A stretch of DNA of 62,271 nucleotides, counting the filler, from Platydemus manokwari (Eukaryota), in NCBI GenBank assembly GCA_037951405.1. It is 6 parts of 6 records of this genome, joined end to end, with 100 filler letters (N's around TTAATTAATTAA, not from the genome) between each part and the next. Parts side by side here need not be neighbours in the genome. Positions count along the whole stretch, not along the records: positions 42,358 to 53,332 come from JBBMOY011005525.1; 5 more parts are not named here. The stretch is one strand, 5' to 3'. The notes beneath the pieces are model-generated. The model had not been told where the DNA came from. It searched no databases and saw nothing but the letters and a program-made list of their open reading frames with translations. A program made the position numbers and the translations under genes. Shown piece after piece: positions 42,358 to 53,332 of the stretch (positions are counted from its first letter, which is position 1; each line of letters starts with the position of its first letter).

Positions 42358-42549
42358 ATACTGCGTTTGATAGCTTATATAAACACCTTTCTAAAAAAGT
42401 ATTACCATACGACATTATATGCAAGCAATACTCCGAGCGACATCTTTTATCAAATCGAAATTTTAAGGTTATACACCCAATAATAATTTATTATTGTCTA
42501 TTTATTATTTGTAATTCGAAAAAGGGATATAGCTGCACAATAACATACA

Positions 42550-42710
42550 GGGATTGACCAATCCCGAGTATACAAAATCAATAAATCCAATAGAAACATG
42601 AGAAATAAAACGTGATACAAAAATTATGCAAAAATCTTGAATATAAGTACAGATCTACCAATTGGACGCCTAATTTTGTGTTTTGCTTTTACATTGATTT
42701 TGATAATTAA
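42550..42710 (+). repeat. Diverged dispersed repeat related to 32215-32420
   Basis: Same collinear blocks as 32215-32420. Confidence 0.5.
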
Positions 42711-43297
42711 AAGCTAAGTTTTTGGTTGTTTTCTATTAAATATGAACTGTTTTTCCAAGGTTAAAAGTTGTTGTATTCGTACTTAATAGTACGTGTTGGT
42801 GAAATACAGGTTGCAACCTTCGATTCTTTTGAACCCCAAAAATTATTTGGTGATTAATGCTGACGTTAGCCTTATTATTCGTCAAATATTTATTCTGGTT
42901 CTCACTAAGTGGTCGTGGATCGGTCAACTACAACTCAGGAGATACAGTGACCTCCTGACATTATATTTCATGAATGTCTCTACATACGGATGGACTGAAA
43001 AAAAATGGATGTAAATTGTTGTATGATATTCAAACATGTAGTTACTGGAACAATTATAGAGTCAAATATTTGGTGAGAATTATTCATCAATAAATAATTT
43101 TATTTCATAATCCAAGAGATAAAAACGAACTTGTCATATCAGTGTCTTTTCCAAGATTCTGTATTTCTTATTTTGTAAACTATTTATCTTTAATCATTGA
43201 AATATCAAATCGTCTATTAAATAGAATTTCAATTTCCTTTGCATTTACTCACATCTTTTTTGTTGGACTATTTTTGTTGAGTTTAGCACTCAACCCA

Positions 43298-43515
43298 ATC
43301 AAATAATCATAGAGAAGTGTTGTGATTAGAATGGGAACTTGGTTTTAAAACTATGTTTTGTCACTATTAGATATCTTTATAAAATGAGATATTAACTGAA
43401 TTATACAAATAAATTAAACATAGCAATTGTATATTAAATTAAGTTATAAAATTATCTCATGCTCGAATATTCATTATAACGAAAGAAGGCCATAGGATCT
43501 TTTTTCTTAAATTAA
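43298..43515 (-). mobile_element. ~550-bp TIR family, partial copy 3
   Basis: TTGGTTTTAAAACTATGTTTTGTCACTATTAG...AAAATTATCTCAT closely matches 59345-59462. Confidence 0.8.
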
Positions 43516-43836
43516 GTCCAGAAATCAATATAAATATATTGTACTTCTGATTCCAATGCAATTCCAAGGCAACATAAACATACTCTGATTCAGATACAAA
43601 ACCACTTCAGTAATAAACCGATCTGATGATCAAAATTCTTGAATTATTAGAATCTCATGAATATTTATGACATGAATAATTATCCTTTGTATGGATATTA
43701 TCTTAATTCTTTTAAATTATAAATCGATAAAAGATATTAATGGGAGGCCACAAATTCTAACTAAATGATTTAAACAACAAATAATAATTAAAGCAATAAT
43801 AGTCATATGATGATATTGATAATAAGAATAGTATTA

Positions 43837-43838
<2 letters not shown>

Positions 43839-43883
<45 letters not shown>
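43839..43883. repeat. (AAT)n microsatellite
   Basis: About 15 perfect units. Confidence 0.95.
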
Positions 43884-43886
<3 letters not shown>

Positions 43887-43954
43887 AAACAAATAATAAT
43901 AACTATTAGAAGTAAGTCGTTTTATACTGAATAATTTATTTAATACAATTGCGA

Positions 43955-44775
43955 TGTTATATACATAATTTTATTGTCGATGATGTAATAACGTCTTGGG
44001 AGATTTCTTGGGTTGTAGCAACTGAGAATTGCGCAATCATTAATCAGCATGCAATCAAACGACATATACACACCATACGTACGACGTTCACTTTTGGAAC
44101 ATTTGAATACATAGAATGTTTATACTTTTACATACTAAAAATAATTATTATGTGAAATTATCTTTTATCAATCAACATTGTAAAATTGTTCGCAAAACAT
44201 TTGGGTTTATATACTTTGATTTTTCTCGATTTTGATTGGTTAAAACTTTTTTACCAATATTTTGATTGGGTAACGAATTATTTTTCGACAGGGATTTTCG
44301 ATTTATTAAATTCGATTTTTATTAGGTGAAGAGTTATTGGGTTTTATATACAGGAATTTATTTCTATTTACAACTTTACGGCCGACCAATTTATTATTTG
44401 CAATTTTATTGTTCACTAGTTTATTTACAATTTTATTACCATATTTTGAATATTTACACGAGTTTTTAATATTTACAATTTTTCCTAGATTATTTCTATT
44501 TACAACAATTGATTTCCTATTTATGCTTTTTGTATTTACAATTTCATTCACTCATACCAGACTTATTTCTAATATATACAATTATACTACTATTATTTTT
44601 ACAATATACACCAATGTTTATATTTAAGCTACTATATACATCCATATTAATTTTGTCTATGTTCAATTTCATGCCCTGTAATTGTCAGGCCTCAATGACC
44701 CATCTATGGTAATCGTTTTTACGCATTTTACTATACACTTTATAACTCAGGATTATTAATACCAAAGTGGTCACA
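43955..44775 (-). mobile_element. Putative 3' LTR of the Gypsy element at 44776-50580
   Basis: On the minus strand it runs TGTG (44775) ... TAACA (43955), with U3-like short repeats (44340-44560), CCAAT boxes (~44268, ~44238), TATATAAA (~44212) and AATAAA (~43975) in the expected order. Boundaries are approximate and no clean PPT is visible. Confidence 0.6.
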
Positions 44776-44789
44776 CTTGTAATTACTAC

Positions 44790-46720
44790 TCCTAGAATTA
44801 TTGTGCCTATTTTTTTTTCCTATATCATTTGATGTTTTCCTAATTAGCATACTGGTCGTGATTTTCTCTTTAACTGTTATCGTTCTTTTTCTTAGTGTTA
44901 CTATAATCGTTTTCAATGTATTTCTTATCAGATTCTTGGGATGTATGATTAATTGTTCCCTATGTATTATTATTTTTCGATTATTCTTCTCGTAATACCA
45001 TATGTTTATTTGAACGTTTTAATCTTCATAAATTTCTTGGGTCAACACCCCCTCAGTTGATTTTATCAGGAATTGTTCTTTATTAACATGCATTCTAACA
45101 TTTATGCAATTTAATTCTTCCCATGTTATCTGTATCTGATTTAGAAATTTCTCTATGAACACTTTCCTTGGCATTTCAGGTGTTTGAATTATCATTGTTT
45201 TCATGTTTTTACCCTTTTTTATCATTGATTGGTAGAACACTCTCATACATTCTGTCATCAGACTTTCTCAAAAGACGCTCTTCTCTAACATTCATTTCAT
45301 TCAATAATTGCGCAACAAACTGTTCTTTATCGTTACTATCAATTAATGTTATCTGACCGTATCTTGAGTATGCCTTTATCTTTTCTTTTCTGAAATCCTC
45401 ATAAGAGAACATCATCATTGGGCTTTCACATGAATGAATATTGGGTAATACTAATAAGGCAGACATCATTGTTGCTATTCTAGGTAAGCGTCTCAATCTT
45501 ATTTCTGGTGGCTCAACTCTTTCTTTTTTAGCATACATTATTATAACTGCTATTATTATTACCGTAACCATAATGGTGAAACTTATTATACATGCTATTC
45601 TTAAATTTTTAATGTCCTTTTCGGTTCCCCTTATAACTTCAGTTAACATTATTCTTTCTTTAATCAGGTTACTTCTCCATTTTTGCTGTTCAATTTTCAT
45701 TTTATGTTTTAATTGATCTATTTTCCCCTTAACTATCTTTTCCCATTCTTCTCTCTTGATTTTATCTCTTATACTTCACATCCTCTGTTGATATTCTTTT
45801 ATCTTTTCCCATTCTCTATTTCTTACCGCTTTTTGTTCATTAATTACCCCATTATTCACCCAATCTGGTATGTTAATCATGAATTTATCCTCCTTAATTG
45901 CACATAACTTAAGATCTTTCTTACAATTACATTTAGAATCCAATGCATTCCATTGAAACTGCTTTGTTGATATTTTATGCAACCCCACTTTGGAAAGTAT
46001 TAAAGCTTGTTCTAACTCATCATTGCTCAGTGTTATCTTTACTTCCTTATCTATTGTTATTTTAATTGATGTTCCCATTAATGGTTGTAAATGATATCTT
46101 ATTTTCTTACAGTATGGTTCCCATGAAATTCCTATCCTTTCTTTTTCCTTTGGAACTTTAAATTTCCATTCATTTATAACCGGTTTTTTTCATTCATCAT
46201 TAATTGTAACCGTCCTATCGCTGATATTGTCATCTTTACCTTTCTTGGGCTCATGAATTCTATCATGACTACGAAATTTATTCTCCATTTTAGTTCTAAC
46301 TTTTCTTCCCACTTTCCTATTATTGTTATTTATCTTAATTTCTCTTTTTTACATATTTCTCCTAATCATTGATGACACTTTATAACTACATCTACCATTT
46401 TCCCCTTTTCATTAACTTATATTTCTTCAATTGTCCTTAATTTTCTTCAATTGCATTTATTTTGACATTCTATTCTTGCACGGTAGAATGAACTTTTTGA
46501 GTTCTAATTTATCAATTTTACAAACGGGTTCCATATCCTTATTTCTTATAAATGATAGTGTAGTTATAACATTTTCCACTTCATTCTCTTTCGTTTTGTT
46601 AAATTCCTTTATCGTCATGTTTTGTGGATTTATCGGGCTTATCATGGAACAAATTATCAAACAGATTATCACTAATTGACTTATCCTATTAATTGATATT
46701 ATTTCACATTCTTTCTCAAT
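44790..46720 (-). pseudogene. Env-position ORF of the Gypsy element (signal peptide, ectodomain, TM, second hydrophobic segment); frameshifted, family unrecognised
   Basis: LVIICLIICSMISPINPQ (signal-like, ~46675-46620); ORF pieces 46457..46672, 45776..46078, 45209..45700 and 45019..45258; TM IACIISFTIMVTVIIIAVIIMYA (45598-45530); IATMMSALLVLPNIHSC (45478-45428). Confidence 0.6.
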
Positions 46721-49700
46721 TTACTTTATGATGTTTATATTTAGGATATATTTCTGGGTTTGTTCTGGTTTCTTTCTTAAAGTATCTTTCCTATTTGCTA
46801 CTATTTGTGGTTCATATTCCGCTTTCTTAAACCTATTTACATGAACTACAGATGGGTCTTCATTTTTCTTCTTTTTAATAAACAGATTGGTATTAGTTAC
46901 TTCTACAACCTCATACGGTTCTTTATATGGTCTTTGTAATTTGGGTGAAATTCCTTTCTTAACCTCTGGGGCATAGATCCTAACCTTATCTCCTATTTTA
47001 AATCCATGACTGCATGCTTTTCTATCATGGTAATCCTTATATTGTTCTTGTTTGAATTTTAAATTCAACTTAGCATGTTGATACGTTTCTCCCAATCTTT
47101 CTTTCATTACAATTACGTATTCTTTTTCGTTTATTAATTGAGATGTCTTTGGCAGAAATTCAAGGTCTATTGGCAAATACGCATCCCTCAGGTGCATGAG
47201 GTAAAACGGTGAATAATTAGTTGCTTCGTTAATAGCTGTATTATATGCAAACCCCAATCAGTTGGCTTTTTATTTATGAAATTCGATAACGTATTTTGCA
47301 ACGTTTGATTGTAACAATCAAATAAACCATCTGCTTGTGGTCTATATGGAGATGTATTGATTTTCTTTATTTTAAAAGTCTCCGTTACTTCTCTAACGAT
47401 GTTACTTAAGAAGTCTTTCTCTCTATCAATCAATAATTTGCTGGGTGCTCCATATTGAAAAATTTTTTTTCTACTAGTAACTTGACTAAGGTCTCACTTT
47501 TATGATTTTTTACTGAGTATGCGAGTGACATTTGGGTGAAATAGTCACAGAATACTATTATGTATTTATTTCCTTTTTCAGTTATTGGTAACGGACCCAT
47601 TACGTCCATTGCACACATTTCCATTGATCTTCCTTCTGGTGGTAAAGGTTTTAACGGTATTTTTCTTATTCTACCGGTATTTTATCGTGTGATTGCACCA
47701 TTTCTCTATATCCTTTTTCATATTATCACATTAATATTTTGCTTTTAACTTTCCATGTGTTTTTCGTTTTGATAGATGACCTCCCAATGCTCCATCATGA
47801 TAGGATAACAACAAAAGGTTCCGTTAATCTTTTAGGTACCACTATTAAATTTTCGTCTCCATATGTTAGAATGTTTCCTTTATTTAACTTATATAATTTA
47901 ATTTTTTCACTATCTTCTCCTTTTTCTATGAACTATCTTATTTTTCCTTATTTTACTATCCTCTTTTAGCTCGTTTACAATCTCTTGCATGTCTATTTTG
48001 GTGTTAACAGTTTGTATAAGGAAATTTACAACATTTATTCCTAATGTCTTATTTTCTGATTTTTCAGGAATTCGGGACATCGGGTCCGCATTACCATTTG
48101 ACTTTCCAGTTCTATATATAATTTTAATGTTATGGTCTTGTAATTTTAACGCCCATTTAATTAATCGACTGCTGGTATCCCTGTGTTTCATTAGACTTTC
48201 TAATGGATTATTGTCGGTATTTAGTATTATTTCGCTTTCATAGATGTACTGACGAAATTCTTTTAATGCAAAAACTATTGCCAAACATTCTTTTTCTATT
48301 CCTTTTCAGATTCTTTTAACGATCTGCTTGCTCAAGCTATTACATGATCAGGTTGTCCTTCTTTCTGTTGTCCTAATACTGCTCCTAATGCCTCATTACT
48401 TGCGTCTGTCATGACTATGAATGGTTTTGTCATATCTGGGTATCTTAACACCGGTGCATGTGTTAGGTTATATTTTAGATTTTCAAACGCTTTGTTTATC
48501 TCCCCATCCTAATTTCATATTAATTTCTCCTTTACTTCTTTTTCCTCTACCTATTGTCTTGTCTATTTTTTTCTGTTGACCATGTTTTCTTTTATATTCT
48601 GCCGATGCCTTTTCATAGCATTATATATTGGCAAAGCTGTTTGTGCATATTTTTTCTTGAAACCTCCTATAATAGCCTGCCATTCTTAAGAATGTCTCAG
48701 CTTCATTCATTGTTGTCGACGCTGGAAATTTTTCAACTTTTTCTATTTTAGCGGGATCGGGTGCTATTTCTTTTGATGATATTATATGTCCTACGAATGT
48801 TACTTTAGGTTTAGCCAATCGACATTTTGTGGGTTTAATTTTTAATCCTGCTTTTTTTAACCGGAAAATCACTCTTCCTATGTCGATTAAATGTTCCTCG
48901 AATGTAAACTAATATATCGTTAATGTAGACCATTGGTAAATCGGTTAAAACGGTATTCATTAACCTTTAAAATGTTGCGGGAGCTCCATTTAAACCAAAA
49001 TACATTTTTACAAACTCATATAATCCTTCTCCTAGACAGAATGCTGTTTTTTCTATATCATCCTCTTTCATTTTAACTTGATTGATTCCCTTATTCAAAT
49101 TCAATTTGGTGTAAAACTTGGCTCCGTTTAACTTATCAAATATTTCCCTTATGTTAGGTAATGGAAATACATCCTGTTTTGTATTTTTATTTAATTTCCT
49201 ATAGTCTGCACAGAGTGTTATTTCTCCATATTTTTTCTTCACTGGGACCATATAGGTTTTAAATGGCGATTTACTTTTTCTTACAAGTCCAAATTCTTCC
49301 ACATCCCTAACTTGTTTTTCAGCTTCTTCTAACAACTTATACGGCATTCTCCGTGATGGTAATTTTATGGGTGTGTTGTCAGTCATTACTATTTCATGTT
49401 CTATTACTGCTGTTGATCCTACATCATATTCATGTTTTGCCATTAGGTCCTTATATTGGTCTATTACTTCTTGTAATTGCTCATTTTGTTCTAATGTCAA
49501 ATTTTCCTCTTGTATTTTTACTTCAGAATATTTTTTAATCCTATCAGGTGTATTAGCATCTACCATTGCTTCTCCTTGATGTATTATTTTATCCTCTGTA
49601 TCACAATTTATTATGTATACTGGAAAACATCCGTCTTTAACTTGTGCAAAGGTATTGATCATTTTAACATTTTCTTTAATCATTTTAGATTCTAACATGA

Positions 49701-50580
49701 ATGTCTTATCCTTATATTCCTCATTTATGAGTATGTGATATATCCCTTTACTCCATTTTGGGATTATCATGTTTTCGCATATTCTTATGATTTTATTCGG
49801 CTTTTCGATTTTATCATTACTTCTATTGGGCATATTTAAGTTCTTGTAATTTCTTAATTTTTCTATTTAATCGCTTGATTTTATTCGTAATGTACGCAAG
49901 TCCAAATACCATCCTTTAAGCCTTCCTAACAAATCCATTCCTATCAACACTGCAAATAATGCTTTTTCTATGACTTTAATCATGTGATCTCTTTTTATGT
50001 TTCCCATTATCAGACTCAAGACTACTTTCCCTACTGTTCTTATAGGTGCTCCTGTTGCTCCTGTTAATGTATCTGTGTCTACTTCTATTTTTTCCATTTC
50101 CTCCGTGTCTAATATTTTAGTGCTCACCAGTGATACATCAGCTCATGTGTCTATCAATGCTTTTACAAATCTTCCTTTTATTTGTACTATTATAATTGGT
50201 CTTGTACCCTTTTTAGGCGTTATTTGCACCATTCTTATTTTGTATAAATGGGGTTGTATTTGCGGATATAATGGTATGTTTTGCTATTTTTCACTTAATG
50301 CCTTAGTACTATCTATTATTTCTTCTATTTGCATTCTAGCCTGTCGATCTTCTAGTGCGAACATGGGTTTAATTCCTTCTACTGTTGGTGGTCGTTGGTA
50401 ATATTCTTGTGGATACTTATGACTTTTTACTTTTATAGGGTTATACATTGACTGTGGTTGTACTAATTGTAGTGGAAGTCTAGGGTTATTTTCTCCTGCT
50501 TTTAACAATTCTATATCTTTTTGATGTTTTACCTATGTTAGATGTTTTGCTATTTGTGGCCAGATGAAACACAAGCCTTG
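46721..50580 (-). mobile_element. Decayed Ty3/Gypsy LTR retrotransposon: gag C-terminus, protease, RT, RNase H, integrase
   Basis: Degenerate knuckle GLCFI..GH..AKH (~50575-50540); KALIDT*ADVSLV (protease, ~50165-50125); LCADYRKLNKNTKQDVFPLPNI, KTAF, YINDIL (RT); TDAS, EKECLAIVFALKEFRQY, RLIKWALKLQ, NADPMSR (RNase H); HDGALGGH, MDVMGP, SPYRPQADG, AYNT..YSPF, KLQRPYKEPY..VHVNRFK (integrase with GPY/F-like module). PR-RT-RH-IN order. Confidence 0.95.
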
Positions 50581-50583
50581 CTA

Positions 50584-52349
50584 AGAACACTTAAATACAT
50601 CCTTCAAGGTTTTTGCCGAAATGATCGATGAGAAAATCGCCTTTATCAATGCTATGATGTAGTATATTCCCAAGGAAAATGAAAATATTTCCCCAATTTC
50701 CTGAAAACCTCCGTAAAGACTATAGAACATTCCCTTAAAATGGTCTGCTGATAGCAACGCCTCATAATTGAGTGATCCGTCAATACTTCCTTGTAACACC
50801 TTATGCACCATATTCATTATGACTTTCTCTATTTGTATCGGAAACAACATATGCTTTCTAGCTTTTTCTATATCCTCAGCTGCGTATATTCCATTTTTAT
50901 CCATATTAGTGAATGGTTTAAAAGCTAAATTTCCTGTTGGTCCATTTGCTTTCAAGGTCTTAACATCACTACGCGGTTTTTTATCATCAGTTCCTATCCA
51001 TCTCCAATAATCAAATCGAAATACAGGATCCATTACATTTAAACAAGCGTCTATTGGAGGTGCCTTATAATTATGTCCTAAGATTATCCTAGTGACCGGT
51101 TGTAAGAACGTTTTTGGTTATTATATATTATTGGCATTTCGTTGGTACAATGCTCATGCTTCCTTATAACAAGATTGATTACTTTTTTGCACTTAAAGGT
51201 ATAAATTAATACTTTCCCTACTACTCGAGCAAATGTTCCTCTCTCCTCAAATATTATAGGTGCTACTAATTCCGGATTCGTTATTGCTAACGCTAACTTA
51301 GTTTTCAAGACTTCTCAACTTAACTTACAATCATTCAATATCAGTTCCATATAGACTTTCTCCATTAAATAGTCCAACTTATTGTTAAAGTATTGTGCTA
51401 GCTTCACATCCAACTTATTGACTTCTCTTTTGGCGTCTTTTATTTCATTCTCACTCAGGTATATTCCTTTATAGTTTGTTACTATAACCATTTGAGCACA
51501 TTTTCTATCTCGACCCTTATGTATAAACCTAGTTGCACTTTTTCCTTCTTCACTCATGTATACCGTTGGTGTTTCTTTCATTCTTATTTCAGATGTTTGC
51601 CTATTACTATTGGGTATATAACTTTCCGCAAACTTTGTCTCTTTAAATATTTTTCCATTTACTGCGTGCAACTTTCCTTTTTAATAACGTTAATAAACAT
51701 TGGTATGGATAAGCCTTATACATTATTAATGATGTTCCTGTGTCACATATTTCCTTCTCGTATTCACAATGTATCCATGCTGTCATTTTTTTAGTCTGAT
51801 CACTAAATGTAGCTTGGAATTCTCTTAATTCTATGATGTAATGTCTTAATGCTACTACATTTTCTAATGTCTTATTCCACACTTGATATTATGAACCCTT
51901 ACAGTAACCTTCTGTTCTTCTCCATCCTGCAGGTCCTATTGTTTGTCTTGTTATGCCTTTCCTTAATGTCATTGCATATCCTTGCGATGTGTAATATGTT
52001 CTTTTCTCAAATGATTGTTTACATTTTTCCTATGTTGGTATTTCTGGCATTGGTGCCCATGCAGGTTCTAATACTGTTGTATATGCTTCTGATGCCTATG
52101 ATCAGTGAAATATTAACTTCTCTGACTTTTTCAAACAGAAATTCGGACTCTTGAATACAGGTACATTTCCTTAGCTATTGATTTTGTTAAATGTACAGGG
52201 TATGATTCCGGACATTTATCAATGTCTAGCAATGAATATTTTTGTCCCCATCGTGGTTTTCCACAATCATATTCATCAATTCCTGTTTCAACACCTCCTA
52301 TTAATCCTACCAGATACATTGTAAGCAACGTTTGAACTATGGTGGTAAA
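50584..52349 (-). pseudogene. Chuvirus-like (Jingchuvirales-type) envelope glycoprotein, frameshifted and C-terminally truncated
   Basis: Collinear motifs across 5-6 broken frames: signal TTIVQTLLTMYLVGLIGGVETG; YDCG..YSLLDIDKCP; QESEF; PAG..EGYCKG..ENVVA; CEYEKEICDTG; KCAQ..TNY; YFNNKLDY..NDCKL; LALA..PE..GTFARVVG..FKC..CTNEMPI; GIY..DIEKARKHMLFP; FQEIG..LGIYYIIALIKAIFSSII (TM). Recognised from recalled family motifs, not from a database search. Confidence 0.8.
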
Positions 52350-53332
52350 CTTAGATTTTTGCTTAAGCTGTTTTTCTGATAATTTTATTTCATTTTGCAT
52401 TATGAGTTTTTCGTTCTCAATCATTTTTTCTAATATTGACTGTATTAATTTAAACCATCCTTGATTTTGATTAATTTCATTCTCATATTCATTTGATATT
52501 AATTCCGCTCCTTCCTCTTTGTCAATTATTTTATTATTCATTAAATTCATCGTCGTTTGCAGGGTTGTTATCATTCTTCCTGGTGTTTTCTCCTCATTTA
52601 AAATATTAATTACTTCCTTAGCTGTTTCCTTATCCGATATTTTGTTGCTTATTTGGTTTATGTCTTCTCTGTATTTACTCGTACAATGCTCTAATGCCTT
52701 TATTTGCAATCTTTCATTTTTATCTAAAGCGCTGGCTTCGCCACTAAGTGCTTGTAAATATTGTTTAATTTTTTCCTTTGCTTCTTCTCTTTGATTAAAT
52801 TCTTTAATTGCCTGTGCATGTGACTGTTTTTTCTCTAAATCGCGGATTTCGTCACTAAGTGCTTGTGTTTGATATTTGATTCTCCATTTAACTTTTTCTT
52901 CTATGTCAGAATCTTTAGGTGGTATGTCTCGTTCGCTTGATTTTAAAGGGTTGTCGCAATTTATGATTTTATTTTCGTCGAATGTTATGGGATCATCGTT
53001 GTTTATGATTTTATTTTTAATTTTATTCTTAACTCCTGGTGGTCTTCCTCTAGTTTTTCTCATTGTTGTTTCTTGATCTCTCATTTCCTTATTATCTTTT
53101 ATTTCTTCTTCTGTTTCAGTTCCTTTCTCTATCCTATCTTCTTCTCTTTTCCTTAACTCTTTTTCTTCATTCCATTTCCCTAACCTATTTTCTTCTATAT
53201 TTTTTCCTTGAACTTCTTATTCTATCATTTCTCCATTGTTACCATAGTTATATGCGACTAATTGATTTATTGGCTCATTTATAGCTTGAAATGTTCTTGA
53301 TGTTGATGGTATACATTCTTCTCTTATCATGT
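52350..53332 (-). pseudogene. Charged/coiled-coil segment with AT-hook, in frame with the glycoprotein signal peptide (probable polyprotein linker or integrase tail)
   Basis: ORF 52131..53084 runs RKTRGRPPG -> E/K-rich helices -> signal peptide -> YDCG without a stop. The same frame extends to the gap at 53333 with one TAA. Confidence 0.6.

What the first reader, a model, noticed from the sequence alone, without database searches (positions are those of the whole stretch)
50584..52349. Chuvirus-like fusion glycoprotein embedded in a Ty3/Gypsy cluster: candidate new enveloped retrotransposon lineage
Seen: ~590 codons of collinear motifs (YDC..SLLD..C; QESEF; AG..G.C.G..NVV; C.Y..CD; Y.N.K; LA..P..G.A..G..KC; C.NE.P; GIY..HMLFP; TM LGIYYIIALIK) lie on the same strand as Gypsy pol on both sides and share the A-rich strand bias of the downstream element. 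Known: this motif series characterises chuvirus glycoproteins, and such genes have been captured as env by BEL/Pao elements (Anakin) in mosquitoes. Inference: here the carrier seems to be Ty3/Gypsy in a probably non-arthropod host. That would be an independent env capture, potentially giving an infectious retrovirus-like element. No chuvirus N or L remnants are visible, which favours env capture over a plain viral integration.
Basis: partly seen in the sequence, partly recalled or inferred. Interest (0 to 1): 0.9.

Follow-up and report, generated by a model that had tools for sequence, protein, structure and literature searches.

The report
Decayed env-carrying Ty3/gypsy retroelement copy
The chuvirus-like fusion glycoprotein gene is really there, but it is the broken envelope gene of a dead Ty3/gypsy endogenous retrovirus of an already described kind (envelope gene placed in front of the polymerase genes), so it is a further example, not a new class.

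Summary
On the minus strand, 52373 to 50581 encodes about 90% of a Monjiviricetes/chuvirus-type fusion glycoprotein (Pfam PF24664; best piece E 7e-18). It is followed directly, on the same strand, by protease, reverse transcriptase, RNase H and integrase whose best solved relative is yeast Ty3.

The whole env-to-integrase stretch aligns collinearly, at 33-39% identity, with single long predicted proteins from at least four unrelated public contigs. Those proteins have the same order, and two others have gag domains in front of env. Env and pol are therefore one element, not a viral integration lying next to a transposon. A predicted structure of the relative P0010 matches herpesvirus gB (class III fusogen) and, among viral models, chu-like virus glycoproteins.

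- Env lies upstream of pro-pol, not between integrase and a 3' LTR.
- This gag-env-pol arrangement in Ty3/gypsy elements is already published (Sacco et al. 2022; Chary and Hayashi 2026), as are gypsy elements with chuvirus-like env.
- The copy is dead: 26 distinct in-frame stops and at least eight frame changes.
- It is cut by the piece's edge. No LTR, no recognisable gag and no host identity could be obtained.

One side lead remains: a long helical leader precedes env, and the differently composed leader at that position in P0010 looks marginally Bcl-2-like.

The parts
53085..53332 (-). Stretch upstream of the leader, cut off by the piece's edge. It may be the tail of gag or more leader.
   Evidence: In the leader's frame this stretch is open up to the piece's edge except for one stop. 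It is rich in E and K. It has no family hit and no match to the gag parts of relatives.
52374..53084 (-). Leader in front of the Env ectodomain. It has a basic, disordered N-terminus, then about 200 residues of K/E/I-rich helices, and ends in a hydrophobic helix that would serve as internal signal or first membrane span. This part of the gene is intact.
   Evidence: ORF list. Composition and hydropathy. AlphaFold2 model with pLDDT 63.6 and helices at 61-263. No homologue in 5.8 billion proteins within the length range searched. No Pfam family. No demonstrable sequence homology to the leaders of P0010 and P0011.
50581..52373 (-). env: a chuvirus-type (Monjiviricetes) class III-like fusion glycoprotein ectodomain plus C-terminal membrane anchor and short tail. 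The gene is broken: 1-3 frame changes and 2-8 in-frame stops (mostly 2-5), depending on the relative used as guide. There is no large deletion.
   Evidence: Pfam PF24664 on three collinear pieces. tblastn of relatives gives the outer bounds and counts. Coverage is 0.87-0.92 for three relatives. Conserved residues at the ectodomain start, in the ORF's own numbering, are D273, C274, S284, L285, C291, P296 and Y310. Membrane anchor. The fold of relative P0010 matches herpesvirus gB at E 4e-13 and chu-like virus glycoproteins at E 4e-41.
46721..50580 (-). pro-pol of a Ty3/gypsy element: a linker, then protease, reverse transcriptase, RNase H and integrase, in that order. The gene is broken: at least 5 frame changes and about 11-13 in-frame stops. 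There is no large deletion.
   Evidence: Pfam RVT_1, RT_RNaseH, Spuma_A9PTase-like and Integrase_p58_C. The RT piece matches Ty3 RT (4ol8, 7q5b) at E 7e-23 and 4e-22. The region is collinear with PR-RT-RH-IN of P0006, P0022, P0042, P0044 and P0045 at 35-43% identity, with coverage 0.86-0.88.
44300..46720 (-). 3' part of unknown content that keeps the element's strand bias. It holds short open stretches, one with a strong membrane span, and presumably a 3' untranslated region or LTR. The lower bound is approximate.
   Evidence: Skew profile. ORFs. No Pfam, PDB or Rfam match. No similarity to the post-integrase tails of relatives. No second LTR copy in the piece to pair with.
42358..44299 (.). 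AT-rich flank without strand bias and without recognisable genes. It contains an (AAT)n microsatellite at 43780-43902.

Best explanation
The window holds one decayed, edge-truncated copy of an envelope-carrying Ty3/gypsy (Metaviridae) endogenous retrovirus of the non-canonical gag-env-pro-pol kind.

Reading the minus strand, the order is:
1. a long helical leader ending in a hydrophobic helix;
2. a chuvirus-type class III fusion glycoprotein with a C-terminal membrane anchor;
3. protease, reverse transcriptase, RNase H and integrase, after a short linker;
4. about 2.4 kb of unassigned 3' sequence.

In intact relatives these parts form one long reading frame.

The likely mode of action of an intact element is inferred, not shown. 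The polyprotein is made on the ER membrane. The hydrophobic helix in front of the ectodomain threads it into the lumen, and the C-terminal anchor holds it in the membrane. Gag and pro-pol stay on the cytosolic side. Signal peptidase and/or the element's protease separate the parts. The trimeric Env on budding particles then fuses membranes, so the element can pass from cell to cell as well as copy itself within a cell.

The copy in the window can do none of this. Both env and pro-pol are broken many times, so it is a fossil.
For: SHOWN:
- Env identity: PF24664 on three collinear pieces, best E 7e-18.
- Relatives: 40 in 1.84 billion representatives.
- Env and pol are one unit. P0006, P0022, P0042 and P0044 are single predicted proteins from different contigs. 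Each aligns collinearly with the window from about 52330-52370 down to about 46760-46826.
- Their Pfam order is glycoprotein, PR, RT, RNase H, IN.
- P0014 (zf-CCHC) and P0024 (Retrotrans_gag) carry gag domains in front of the glycoprotein.
- One HSP runs from the end of env into the protease region in a single frame, which fits an ancestral continuous frame.
- Env and pro-pol are about equally diverged from each relative, at 33-39%.
- Ty3/gypsy affinity: the RT piece matches Ty3 at E 7e-23, far better than retroviruses. Relative P0045 matches Ty3 Gag-Pol at E 1.9e-122 over RT-RH-IN.
- Class III fold in relative P0010: pLDDT 76.5 overall and above 90 over much of the ectodomain. Foldseek top hits are herpesvirus gB at E 4e-13, probability 1.0. 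The BFVD top hits are chu-like virus glycoproteins at E 4e-41.
- Decay: 26 distinct in-frame stops of all three kinds, aligned to many different residues, so they are not an alternative genetic code.

FROM THE LITERATURE:
- The GAG-ENV-POL order with gB-type ENV is reported in Ty3/gypsy elements of Nematoda, Bryozoa and Platyhelminthes.
- Gypsy elements with Chuviridae-like glycoproteins are reported in several arthropod groups (PMC13524379).
Against: - No LTR pair, primer-binding site or recognisable gag lies in the piece. The element runs off the edge, so its full retroelement anatomy is not shown for this copy.
- The relatives are unnamed metagenome-derived proteins of unknown host, only 31-46% identical to the window.
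- The class III fold was predicted for a relative, not for the window's broken gene.
- I could not read Sacco et al. 2022, so the match to their elements rests on the title and on what Chary and Hayashi say of it.
- Topology, processing and fusion activity are inferred from known class III fusogens and polyprotein viruses.
Confidence: 0.85

Rival explanations
1. One reading: a new enveloped retrotransposon lineage born from an independent capture of a chuvirus glycoprotein by a Ty3/gypsy element in this, probably non-arthropod, host.
For: The closest protein among 1.84 billion representatives is only 46% identical, over a fragment. Full-length relatives are 31-39% identical, so the lineage is deep and not closely represented. 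Dezordi et al. 2023 found no clear Gypsy capture in arthropods. The host is unknown.
Against: At least ten relatives carry the glycoprotein directly in front of protease, and four of them run through to integrase. Env and pol diverge in step, so env was already present in a common ancestor. The arrangement and the env type are already published for Ty3/gypsy.
Confidence: 0.1
2. A chance neighbourhood: a non-retroviral integration of a chuvirus glycoprotein gene (a plain endogenous viral element) that happens to lie beside an unrelated, 5'-truncated Gypsy fragment in a transposon-rich region.
For: Chuvirus glycoprotein integrations are often flanked by fragmentary Gypsy and Pao copies (PMC10084718). 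No LTRs or gag are visible here.
Against: The two genes share strand and strand bias and are separated only by a short linker that is itself homologous in relatives. The whole 5.6 kb is collinear with single reading frames in at least four independent contigs. There are no N or L remnants.
Confidence: 0.03
3. An Anakin-like BEL/Pao element with a chuvirus env, as in mosquitoes.
For: The env family is the same (PF24664). Anakin is the textbook case.
Against: The RT is closest to Ty3. Relatives carry RT_RNaseH, RT_RNaseH_2 and Integrase_H2C2, as Ty3/gypsy elements do. No BEL/Pao family appears in any scan. Env lies before pol, not after it.
Confidence: 0.01
4. A host gene: an env co-opted by the host as a cellular fusogen or antiviral factor.
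For: Captured env genes are sometimes domesticated. The first open stretch, holding the leader and the ectodomain start, is intact.
Against: The glycoprotein reading frame is interrupted by several stops and frame changes and is still attached to an equally decayed pol.
Confidence: 0.01

Closest known systems
Non-canonical nematode endogenous retroviruses (Sacco, Lau, Godinez-Vidal and Kaloshian 2022, J Gen Virol 103:1739)
   Same: A metavirus (Ty3/gypsy) backbone that captured an RNA-virus glycoprotein gene. Env and pol are in flipped order, with env in front of pol, as Chary and Hayashi report of that paper.
   Different: The paper is not in the library, so I compared no sequence and no detail. 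The window's host is unknown. This copy is decayed and lacks visible gag and LTRs.
'Ancient errantiviruses' with HSV/gB-type ENV in GAG-ENV-POL order (Chary and Hayashi, eLife 2026, PMC13524379)
   Same: Ty3/gypsy pol, a class III gB-like Env, and env between gag and pol. The ectodomain is flanked by two membrane-spanning or signal segments. The paper also reports 114 gypsy elements with Chuviridae-like glycoproteins.
   Different: Those are intact, mostly multicopy elements with LTRs and primer-binding sites in named hosts (Nematoda, Bryozoa, Platyhelminthes, several arthropod groups). Here there is a single broken copy of unknown host, at most 39% identical to any long relative I could retrieve.
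Anakin (BEL/Pao with chuvirus glycoprotein, mosquitoes; Dezordi et al. 2020, PMC7642597)
   Same: A chuvirus-type glycoprotein serves as env of an LTR retroelement.
   Different: The carrier here is Ty3/gypsy, not BEL/Pao. Env lies upstream of pro-pol.
Glycoproteins of Chuviridae/Jingchuvirales and other Monjiviricetes (Pfam PF24664)
   Same: Sequence family membership. The model of a relative best matches chu-like virus glycoproteins among viral models, at E 4e-41 to 1e-33 and 17-22% identity.
   Different: The gene is embedded in a reverse-transcribing element, with no N or L genes. A roughly 240-residue helical leader precedes the ectodomain.
Herpesvirus glycoprotein B (class III fusogen)
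   Same: The fold of relative P0010 matches: Foldseek E 4e-13, probability 1.0, about 600-730 aligned columns.
   Different: There is no significant sequence similarity; the profile against PDB sequences gives E about 0.5. TM-scores are 0.2-0.44, as expected for multi-domain proteins modelled in different conformations.
Drosophila gypsy / insect errantiviruses
   Same: A Ty3/gypsy backbone with an env gene.
   Different: Those carry an F-type (class I, baculovirus F-like) env downstream of pol. Here the env is class III-like and upstream of pol.

Membership tests
Pfam PF24664 Monjiviricetes_fusion (chuvirus-type glycoprotein) | Profile match above the curated gathering score | tested here: met
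   Two pieces score 34.3 and 64.3 bits against a cut-off of 27. A third scores 17.9 bits and is collinear.
Pfam PF24664 Monjiviricetes_fusion (chuvirus-type glycoprotein) | Near full-length ectodomain followed by a C-terminal membrane anchor | tested here: met
   0.87-0.92 of the domain of P0010, P0006 and P0011 is covered. A hydrophobic anchor lies near the C-terminus. The frame is broken.
Class III viral fusogens (gB / G / GP64 type) | Characteristic multi-domain fold with a long central helix | tested here: inconclusive
   Met for relative P0010: model pLDDT 76.5, central helix at 444-491, gB hits at E 4e-13.
Ty3/gypsy (Metaviridae) | Domain order PR-RT-RNase H-IN | tested here: met
   Pfam hits and collinear tblastn.
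Ty3/gypsy (Metaviridae) | RT closer to Ty3/gypsy than to other reverse-transcribing groups | tested here: met
   Ty3 RT scores E 7e-23, caulimovirus 4e-13 and spumaviruses 1e-5. P0045 matches Ty3 Gag-Pol at 1.9e-122. No BEL/Pao structure exists in the PDB for comparison, and no tree was built.
Ty3/gypsy (Metaviridae) | Long terminal repeats, primer-binding site and gag | tested here: inconclusive
   There is no direct repeat pair and no tRNA-related site in the piece. The 5' part lies beyond the piece's edge. The 3' LTR cannot be recognised without its partner.
gag-env-pro-pol endogenous retroviruses (Sacco 2022; GAG-ENV-POL errantiviruses of Chary and Hayashi 2026) | env directly upstream of protease on the same strand, collinear with relatives that have one frame | tested here: met
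gag-env-pro-pol endogenous retroviruses (Sacco 2022; GAG-ENV-POL errantiviruses of Chary and Hayashi 2026) | gag upstream of env | tested here: inconclusive
   Relatives P0014 and P0024 have zf-CCHC or Retrotrans_gag in front of env. In the window, the roughly 950 bases upstream of the ectodomain show no gag family, and then the piece ends.
gag-env-pro-pol endogenous retroviruses (Sacco 2022; GAG-ENV-POL errantiviruses of Chary and Hayashi 2026) | Host in Nematoda, Bryozoa or Platyhelminthes | not tested
   Establishing the host would need a look-up of the source contig or of relatives' contigs.
BEL/Pao (Belpaoviridae; Anakin) | BEL/Pao-type protease, RT or gag families | tested here: not met
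   No BEL/Pao family appears in any Pfam scan of the window or of relatives.
Plain non-retroviral chuvirus integration | Glycoprotein not linked to RT; N or L remnants possible | tested here: not met
   The gene is linked to pro-pol as in relatives. No N or L family was found.
Bcl-2 family (for the leader) | PF00452 above the gathering score, or significant similarity to solved Bcl-2 proteins | tested here: not met
   The window shows no Pfam or PDB sequence hit, and its leader is not demonstrably homologous to that of P0010 or P0011. Relative P0010 scores 20.1 bits against a cut-off of 31.4 (E 9.6e-4) and matches Bcl-xL at E 0.0099. The Foldseek hits of the window model are all above E 0.03.

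The most novel reading that the evidence does not exclude
The copy is a fossil of a deep, so far undescribed branch of gag-env-pro-pol metaviruses, possibly in a host group where none is recorded. In this branch the Env ectodomain is preceded by a long cytosolic helical domain. In the relative P0010 the segment at that position, which shows no sequence similarity to the window's leader, resembles the BH1-BH2 half of Bcl-2 proteins followed by a membrane anchor. That would be a captured apoptosis-regulator-like domain in a retroelement, which I found in no paper of the library.
Probability: 0.2. Interest if true: 0.65.

Novelty: new member of a known kind. Interest (0 to 1): 0.3.

Why it matters
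It adds one divergent fossil to a recently recognised and widespread group: Ty3/gypsy retroelements that carry a class III, chuvirus/gB-type envelope gene in front of pol.

Its value is descriptive. It is a data point for the distribution and age of these elements. It also shows that the public protein collections hold many unnamed relatives, and one of them is filed under a bacterial genome bin.

It does not open a new class, and this copy has no coding capacity left. The only part that might repay further work is the unexplained leader in front of Env.

Tried and rejected
- Alternative genetic code as the cause of the stops. Rejected: all three stop codons occur and align to many different residues.
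- LTR search inside the piece. No pair was found. There are no tRNA genes and no Rfam family.
- Homologues of the first open stretch. There are none in the allowed length range.
- Homologues of the P0010 leader. There are none beyond P0010 itself.
- A search with P0010. It gave four unnamed proteins.
- The post-integrase 2.4 kb. No Pfam or PDB match, and no similarity to the tails of relatives. The bacterial-type promoter/terminator scan is uninformative here.
- Host identification from the flank. Nothing is recognisable.
- Names of relatives. Nearly all are unnamed. P0022 is filed as a Flavobacteriaceae MAG protein, and the P0032 cluster is Trichogramma kaykai 'Glycoprotein'.
- A Bcl-2-like leader in the window. 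The Foldseek hits looked suggestive. However, the model's alignment contained P0010 and P0011, and a leader-only profile test scored no better than shuffles. It is therefore not claimed for the window.
- Sacco et al. 2022 could not be read. One literature search was badly phrased and wasted.

Slips I own up to:
- My first notebook entry repeats the bounds of open stretches as printed by the ORF listing. These coincide with some break places.
Full report
SCOPE. I worked only on the piece 42358-53332. I took no contig for human. Broken genes are given as single parts, with counts of breaks only.

1. THE OBSERVATION.

The piece is about 30% G+C. From about 44350 to its upper end the plus strand is strongly T-rich (AT skew -0.15 to -0.5), so the coding strand is the minus strand and is A-rich.

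The hits are in collinear order:
- profile 244-339 (E 8e-4);
- profile 346-408 (E 9e-9);
- profile 454-584 (E 7e-18).
Two of them exceed the curated cut-off.

Five of the six motifs that survive in the finding are present on the minus strand, in order, spread over three frames. One (C.Y..CD) is not there as written. The last piece ends in a hydrophobic anchor and a short tail.

With full-length relatives as guides, the glycoprotein homology runs from 52373 to 50581. It covers 0.87-0.92 of the domain in three relatives.

2. WHAT SURROUNDS IT.

Directly downstream on the same strand lie the following, found by Pfam and by homology:
- a short linker;
- a protease-like stretch;
- RVT_1;
- RT_RNaseH;
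- an integrase.

The RT piece is closest to the solved Ty3 RT (4ol8 at E 7e-23, 7q5b at 4e-22). Caulimovirus and spumavirus RTs are far behind. No BEL/Pao family appears anywhere.

Upstream of the ectodomain, the same open stretch carries about 240 further residues:
- a basic, disordered start;
- K/E/I-rich helices;
- a hydrophobic helix just before the conserved start of the ectodomain (invariant D273, C274, C291 and P296 in the ORF's own numbering).

In that frame the 250 bases up to the piece's edge are open but for one stop.

Downstream of integrase, about 2.4 kb keeps the element's strand bias but matches nothing. Below about 44300 the bias stops. The flank is AT-rich, has an (AAT)n run at 43780-43902 and holds no recognisable gene.

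There is no direct-repeat pair that could be LTRs and no tRNA-related feature. No N or L remnant was seen.

3. RELATIVES.

A full HMMER scan of 1.84 billion representative proteins with the C-terminal glycoprotein piece gave 40 hits. The best was 46% identical, over a fragment.

Many hits are long predicted proteins in which PF24664 is followed by retroelement enzymes:
- P0003: glycoprotein, RVP, RVT_1, RNase H.
- P0006: 2855 aa; glycoprotein, two protease-like domains, RT, RNase H, integrase.
- P0022 and P0042: the same order through to integrase.
- P0004, P0007 and P0011: glycoprotein followed by protease.
- P0014: zf-CCHC in front of the glycoprotein, which is followed by protease.
- P0024: Retrotrans_gag in front of the glycoprotein, which is followed by protease.

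tblastn of these proteins against the piece shows that P0006, P0022, P0042 and P0044 each align collinearly on the minus strand. The alignment runs from about 52330-52370 down to about 46760-46826. That is env through integrase as one unit.

Identity is alike for env and for pro-pol in each relative (33-39%) and ranks the relatives in nearly the same order. One HSP runs from the end of env into the protease region in one frame. This fits an ancestral continuous frame.

Env and pol therefore belong to one element and descend together.

Nearly all relatives are unnamed proteins from metagenome assemblies. P0022 is filed in NCBI as a hypothetical protein of a Flavobacteriaceae genome bin, on a 9-kb contig. 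The more distant stand-alone glycoprotein cluster P0032 belongs to the wasp Trichogramma kaykai.

4. FOLD.

Instead I modelled P0010, a full-length relative whose glycoprotein part is 34% identical to the window. I used an alignment of 33 relatives.

The model has mean pLDDT 76.5, above 90 over much of the ectodomain, and a long central helix.

Foldseek results:
- Against the PDB, the top of the list is all herpesvirus gB: E 4e-13, probability 1.0, about 600-730 aligned columns.
- Against viral models, glycoproteins of chu-like and related negative-strand RNA viruses lead: E 4e-41 to 1e-33 at 17-22% identity.
- At the sequence level, a profile of the relatives reaches gB only below threshold, at E about 0.5.

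'Chuvirus-like' and 'class III-like' both hold for the family. For the window's own gene they follow by homology.

5. STATE OF THE COPY.

Using several relatives as guides:
- env shows 1-3 frame changes and 2-8 (mostly 2-5) in-frame stops;
- pro-pol shows at least 5 frame changes and about 11-13 stops.

Pooled, there are 26 distinct in-frame stops: 11 TAA, 8 TGA and 7 TAG. They align to many different residues, so this is decay and not another genetic code.

There is no large deletion or insertion. Coverage is about 0.9 for env and 0.86-0.88 for PR-IN. The leader stretch is the only long intact part.

6. HOW IT WORKS.

Shown: identity, order, linkage and fold of the parts.

Inferred, from what is known of class III fusogens and of membrane-threaded viral polyproteins, for an intact element:
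- It would translate gag-leader-env-pro-pol as one polyprotein.
- The hydrophobic helix before the ectodomain would act as an internal signal.
- The C-terminal anchor would fix Env in the membrane, with gag and pro-pol on the cytosolic side.
- Cleavage by signal peptidase and/or the element's protease would free the parts.
- Trimeric Env on particles would mediate entry into other cells.

Chary and Hayashi note that gB-type ENV ectodomains of such elements are flanked either by a signal peptide and a membrane span or by two membrane spans. That matches the layout here. The window's copy is inactive.

7. COMPARISON WITH WHAT IS KNOWN.

Dezordi et al. 2023 saw many Gypsy fragments next to chuvirus glycoprotein integrations but no clear Gypsy capture.

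Two further works cover this case:
- Sacco et al. [quoted passage not shown] I saw only the title, and the paper is not held.
- Chary and Hayashi (eLife 2026; preprint 2023).

Chary and Hayashi describe:
- env-carrying Ty3/gypsy elements across Metazoa with F-type or HSV/gB-type ENV;
- a GAG-ENV-POL order in Nematoda, Bryozoa and Platyhelminthes;
- 114 gypsy elements with the Chuviridae-like glycoprotein in Coleoptera, Hymenoptera, Polyneoptera and Hexanauplia.

The window's element fits that kind in every feature I could test. See the membership table. Gag, LTRs and host remain untested or inconclusive because the piece ends and because of the steps I left out.

8. SIDE LEAD: THE LEADER.

For the relative P0010:
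- Residues 9-70 hit Pfam Bcl-2 (E 9.6e-4, 20 bits, below the cut-off of 31.4).
- The top PDB sequence hits of the whole protein are Bcl-xL (E 0.0099, residues 9-80 against 125-200).
- P0011 hits the same profile part weakly, at E 0.2.

For the window:
- The AlphaFold2 model of the first open stretch (pLDDT 63.6) gave a Foldseek list made almost wholly of Bcl-2 family proteins. The best E was only 0.038.
- The alignment used for that model contained P0010 and P0011, so the result is not independent.
- A leader-only profile of P0010 and P0011 scores the window's leader no better than shuffles: 1103 of 2000 shuffles do as well.
- The window's stretch alone finds no Bcl-2 protein.

I therefore claim a marginal Bcl-2-like signal for P0010 only. 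What the window's leader is remains unexplained. Neither the eLife paper nor a library search mentions such a domain in retroelements.

9. STEPS LEFT OUT AND SLIPS.

I did not look up or fetch DNA of the relatives' contigs or of the window's source contig. I did not scan the viral contig collection with the glycoprotein. As a result, host, copy number, gag and LTRs stay open.

10. VERDICT.

Novelty: a new member of a known kind. Interest: 0.3.

Noticed in passing
window 52374-53084 (minus strand); relatives P0010 residues 9-80 and P0011 residues 52-113: A roughly 240-residue helical leader precedes the Env ectodomain. In relative P0010, the segment at that position gives marginal Bcl-2 family hits (Pfam E 9.6e-4; Bcl-xL E 0.0099). 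The window's own leader shows no demonstrable homology to that stretch, and its Bcl-2-like Foldseek hits are weak and not independent.
   Followed up: partly
window 45209-45700 (minus strand), within the unassigned 44300-46720 stretch: Downstream of integrase lies an open stretch of 163 codons with a very hydrophobic segment (Kyte-Doolittle 3.0). It has no Pfam or PDB match and no likeness to the post-integrase tails of relatives. It could be an accessory gene, a remnant of something else, or chance.
   Followed up: partly
protein P0022 (relative, not in the window): This 2627-residue single reading frame carries glycoprotein, PR, RT, RNase H and IN. In NCBI it is recorded as a hypothetical protein of a Flavobacteriaceae metagenome-assembled genome (HBK71150.1), on a 9084-base contig. 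It is most likely a metazoan retroelement contig binned with bacteria.
   Followed up: no
relatives P0006, P0007, P0011, P0014, P0024, P0042: Several relatives carry two protease-like domains in a row between Env and RT. In the window I saw one clear protease-like stretch.
   Followed up: no
protein P0020 (relative, not in the window): Here the glycoprotein domain sits at the C-terminal end (1345-1952) of a 1963-residue protein, and the first 1340 residues gave no Pfam family at E 1e-3. This is a different, unexplained context for the same env family.
   Followed up: no
window 43780-43902: An (AAT)n microsatellite of about 40 units lies in the AT-rich flank.
   Followed up: no
protein P0002 (hit): This 2505-residue repetitive protein matched the query in four short stretches. 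It gives implausible, high-scoring Pfam hits with no accepted stretch (DASH_Ask1 and others). It is probably a low-complexity artefact, and I excluded it from the alignments.
   Followed up: no
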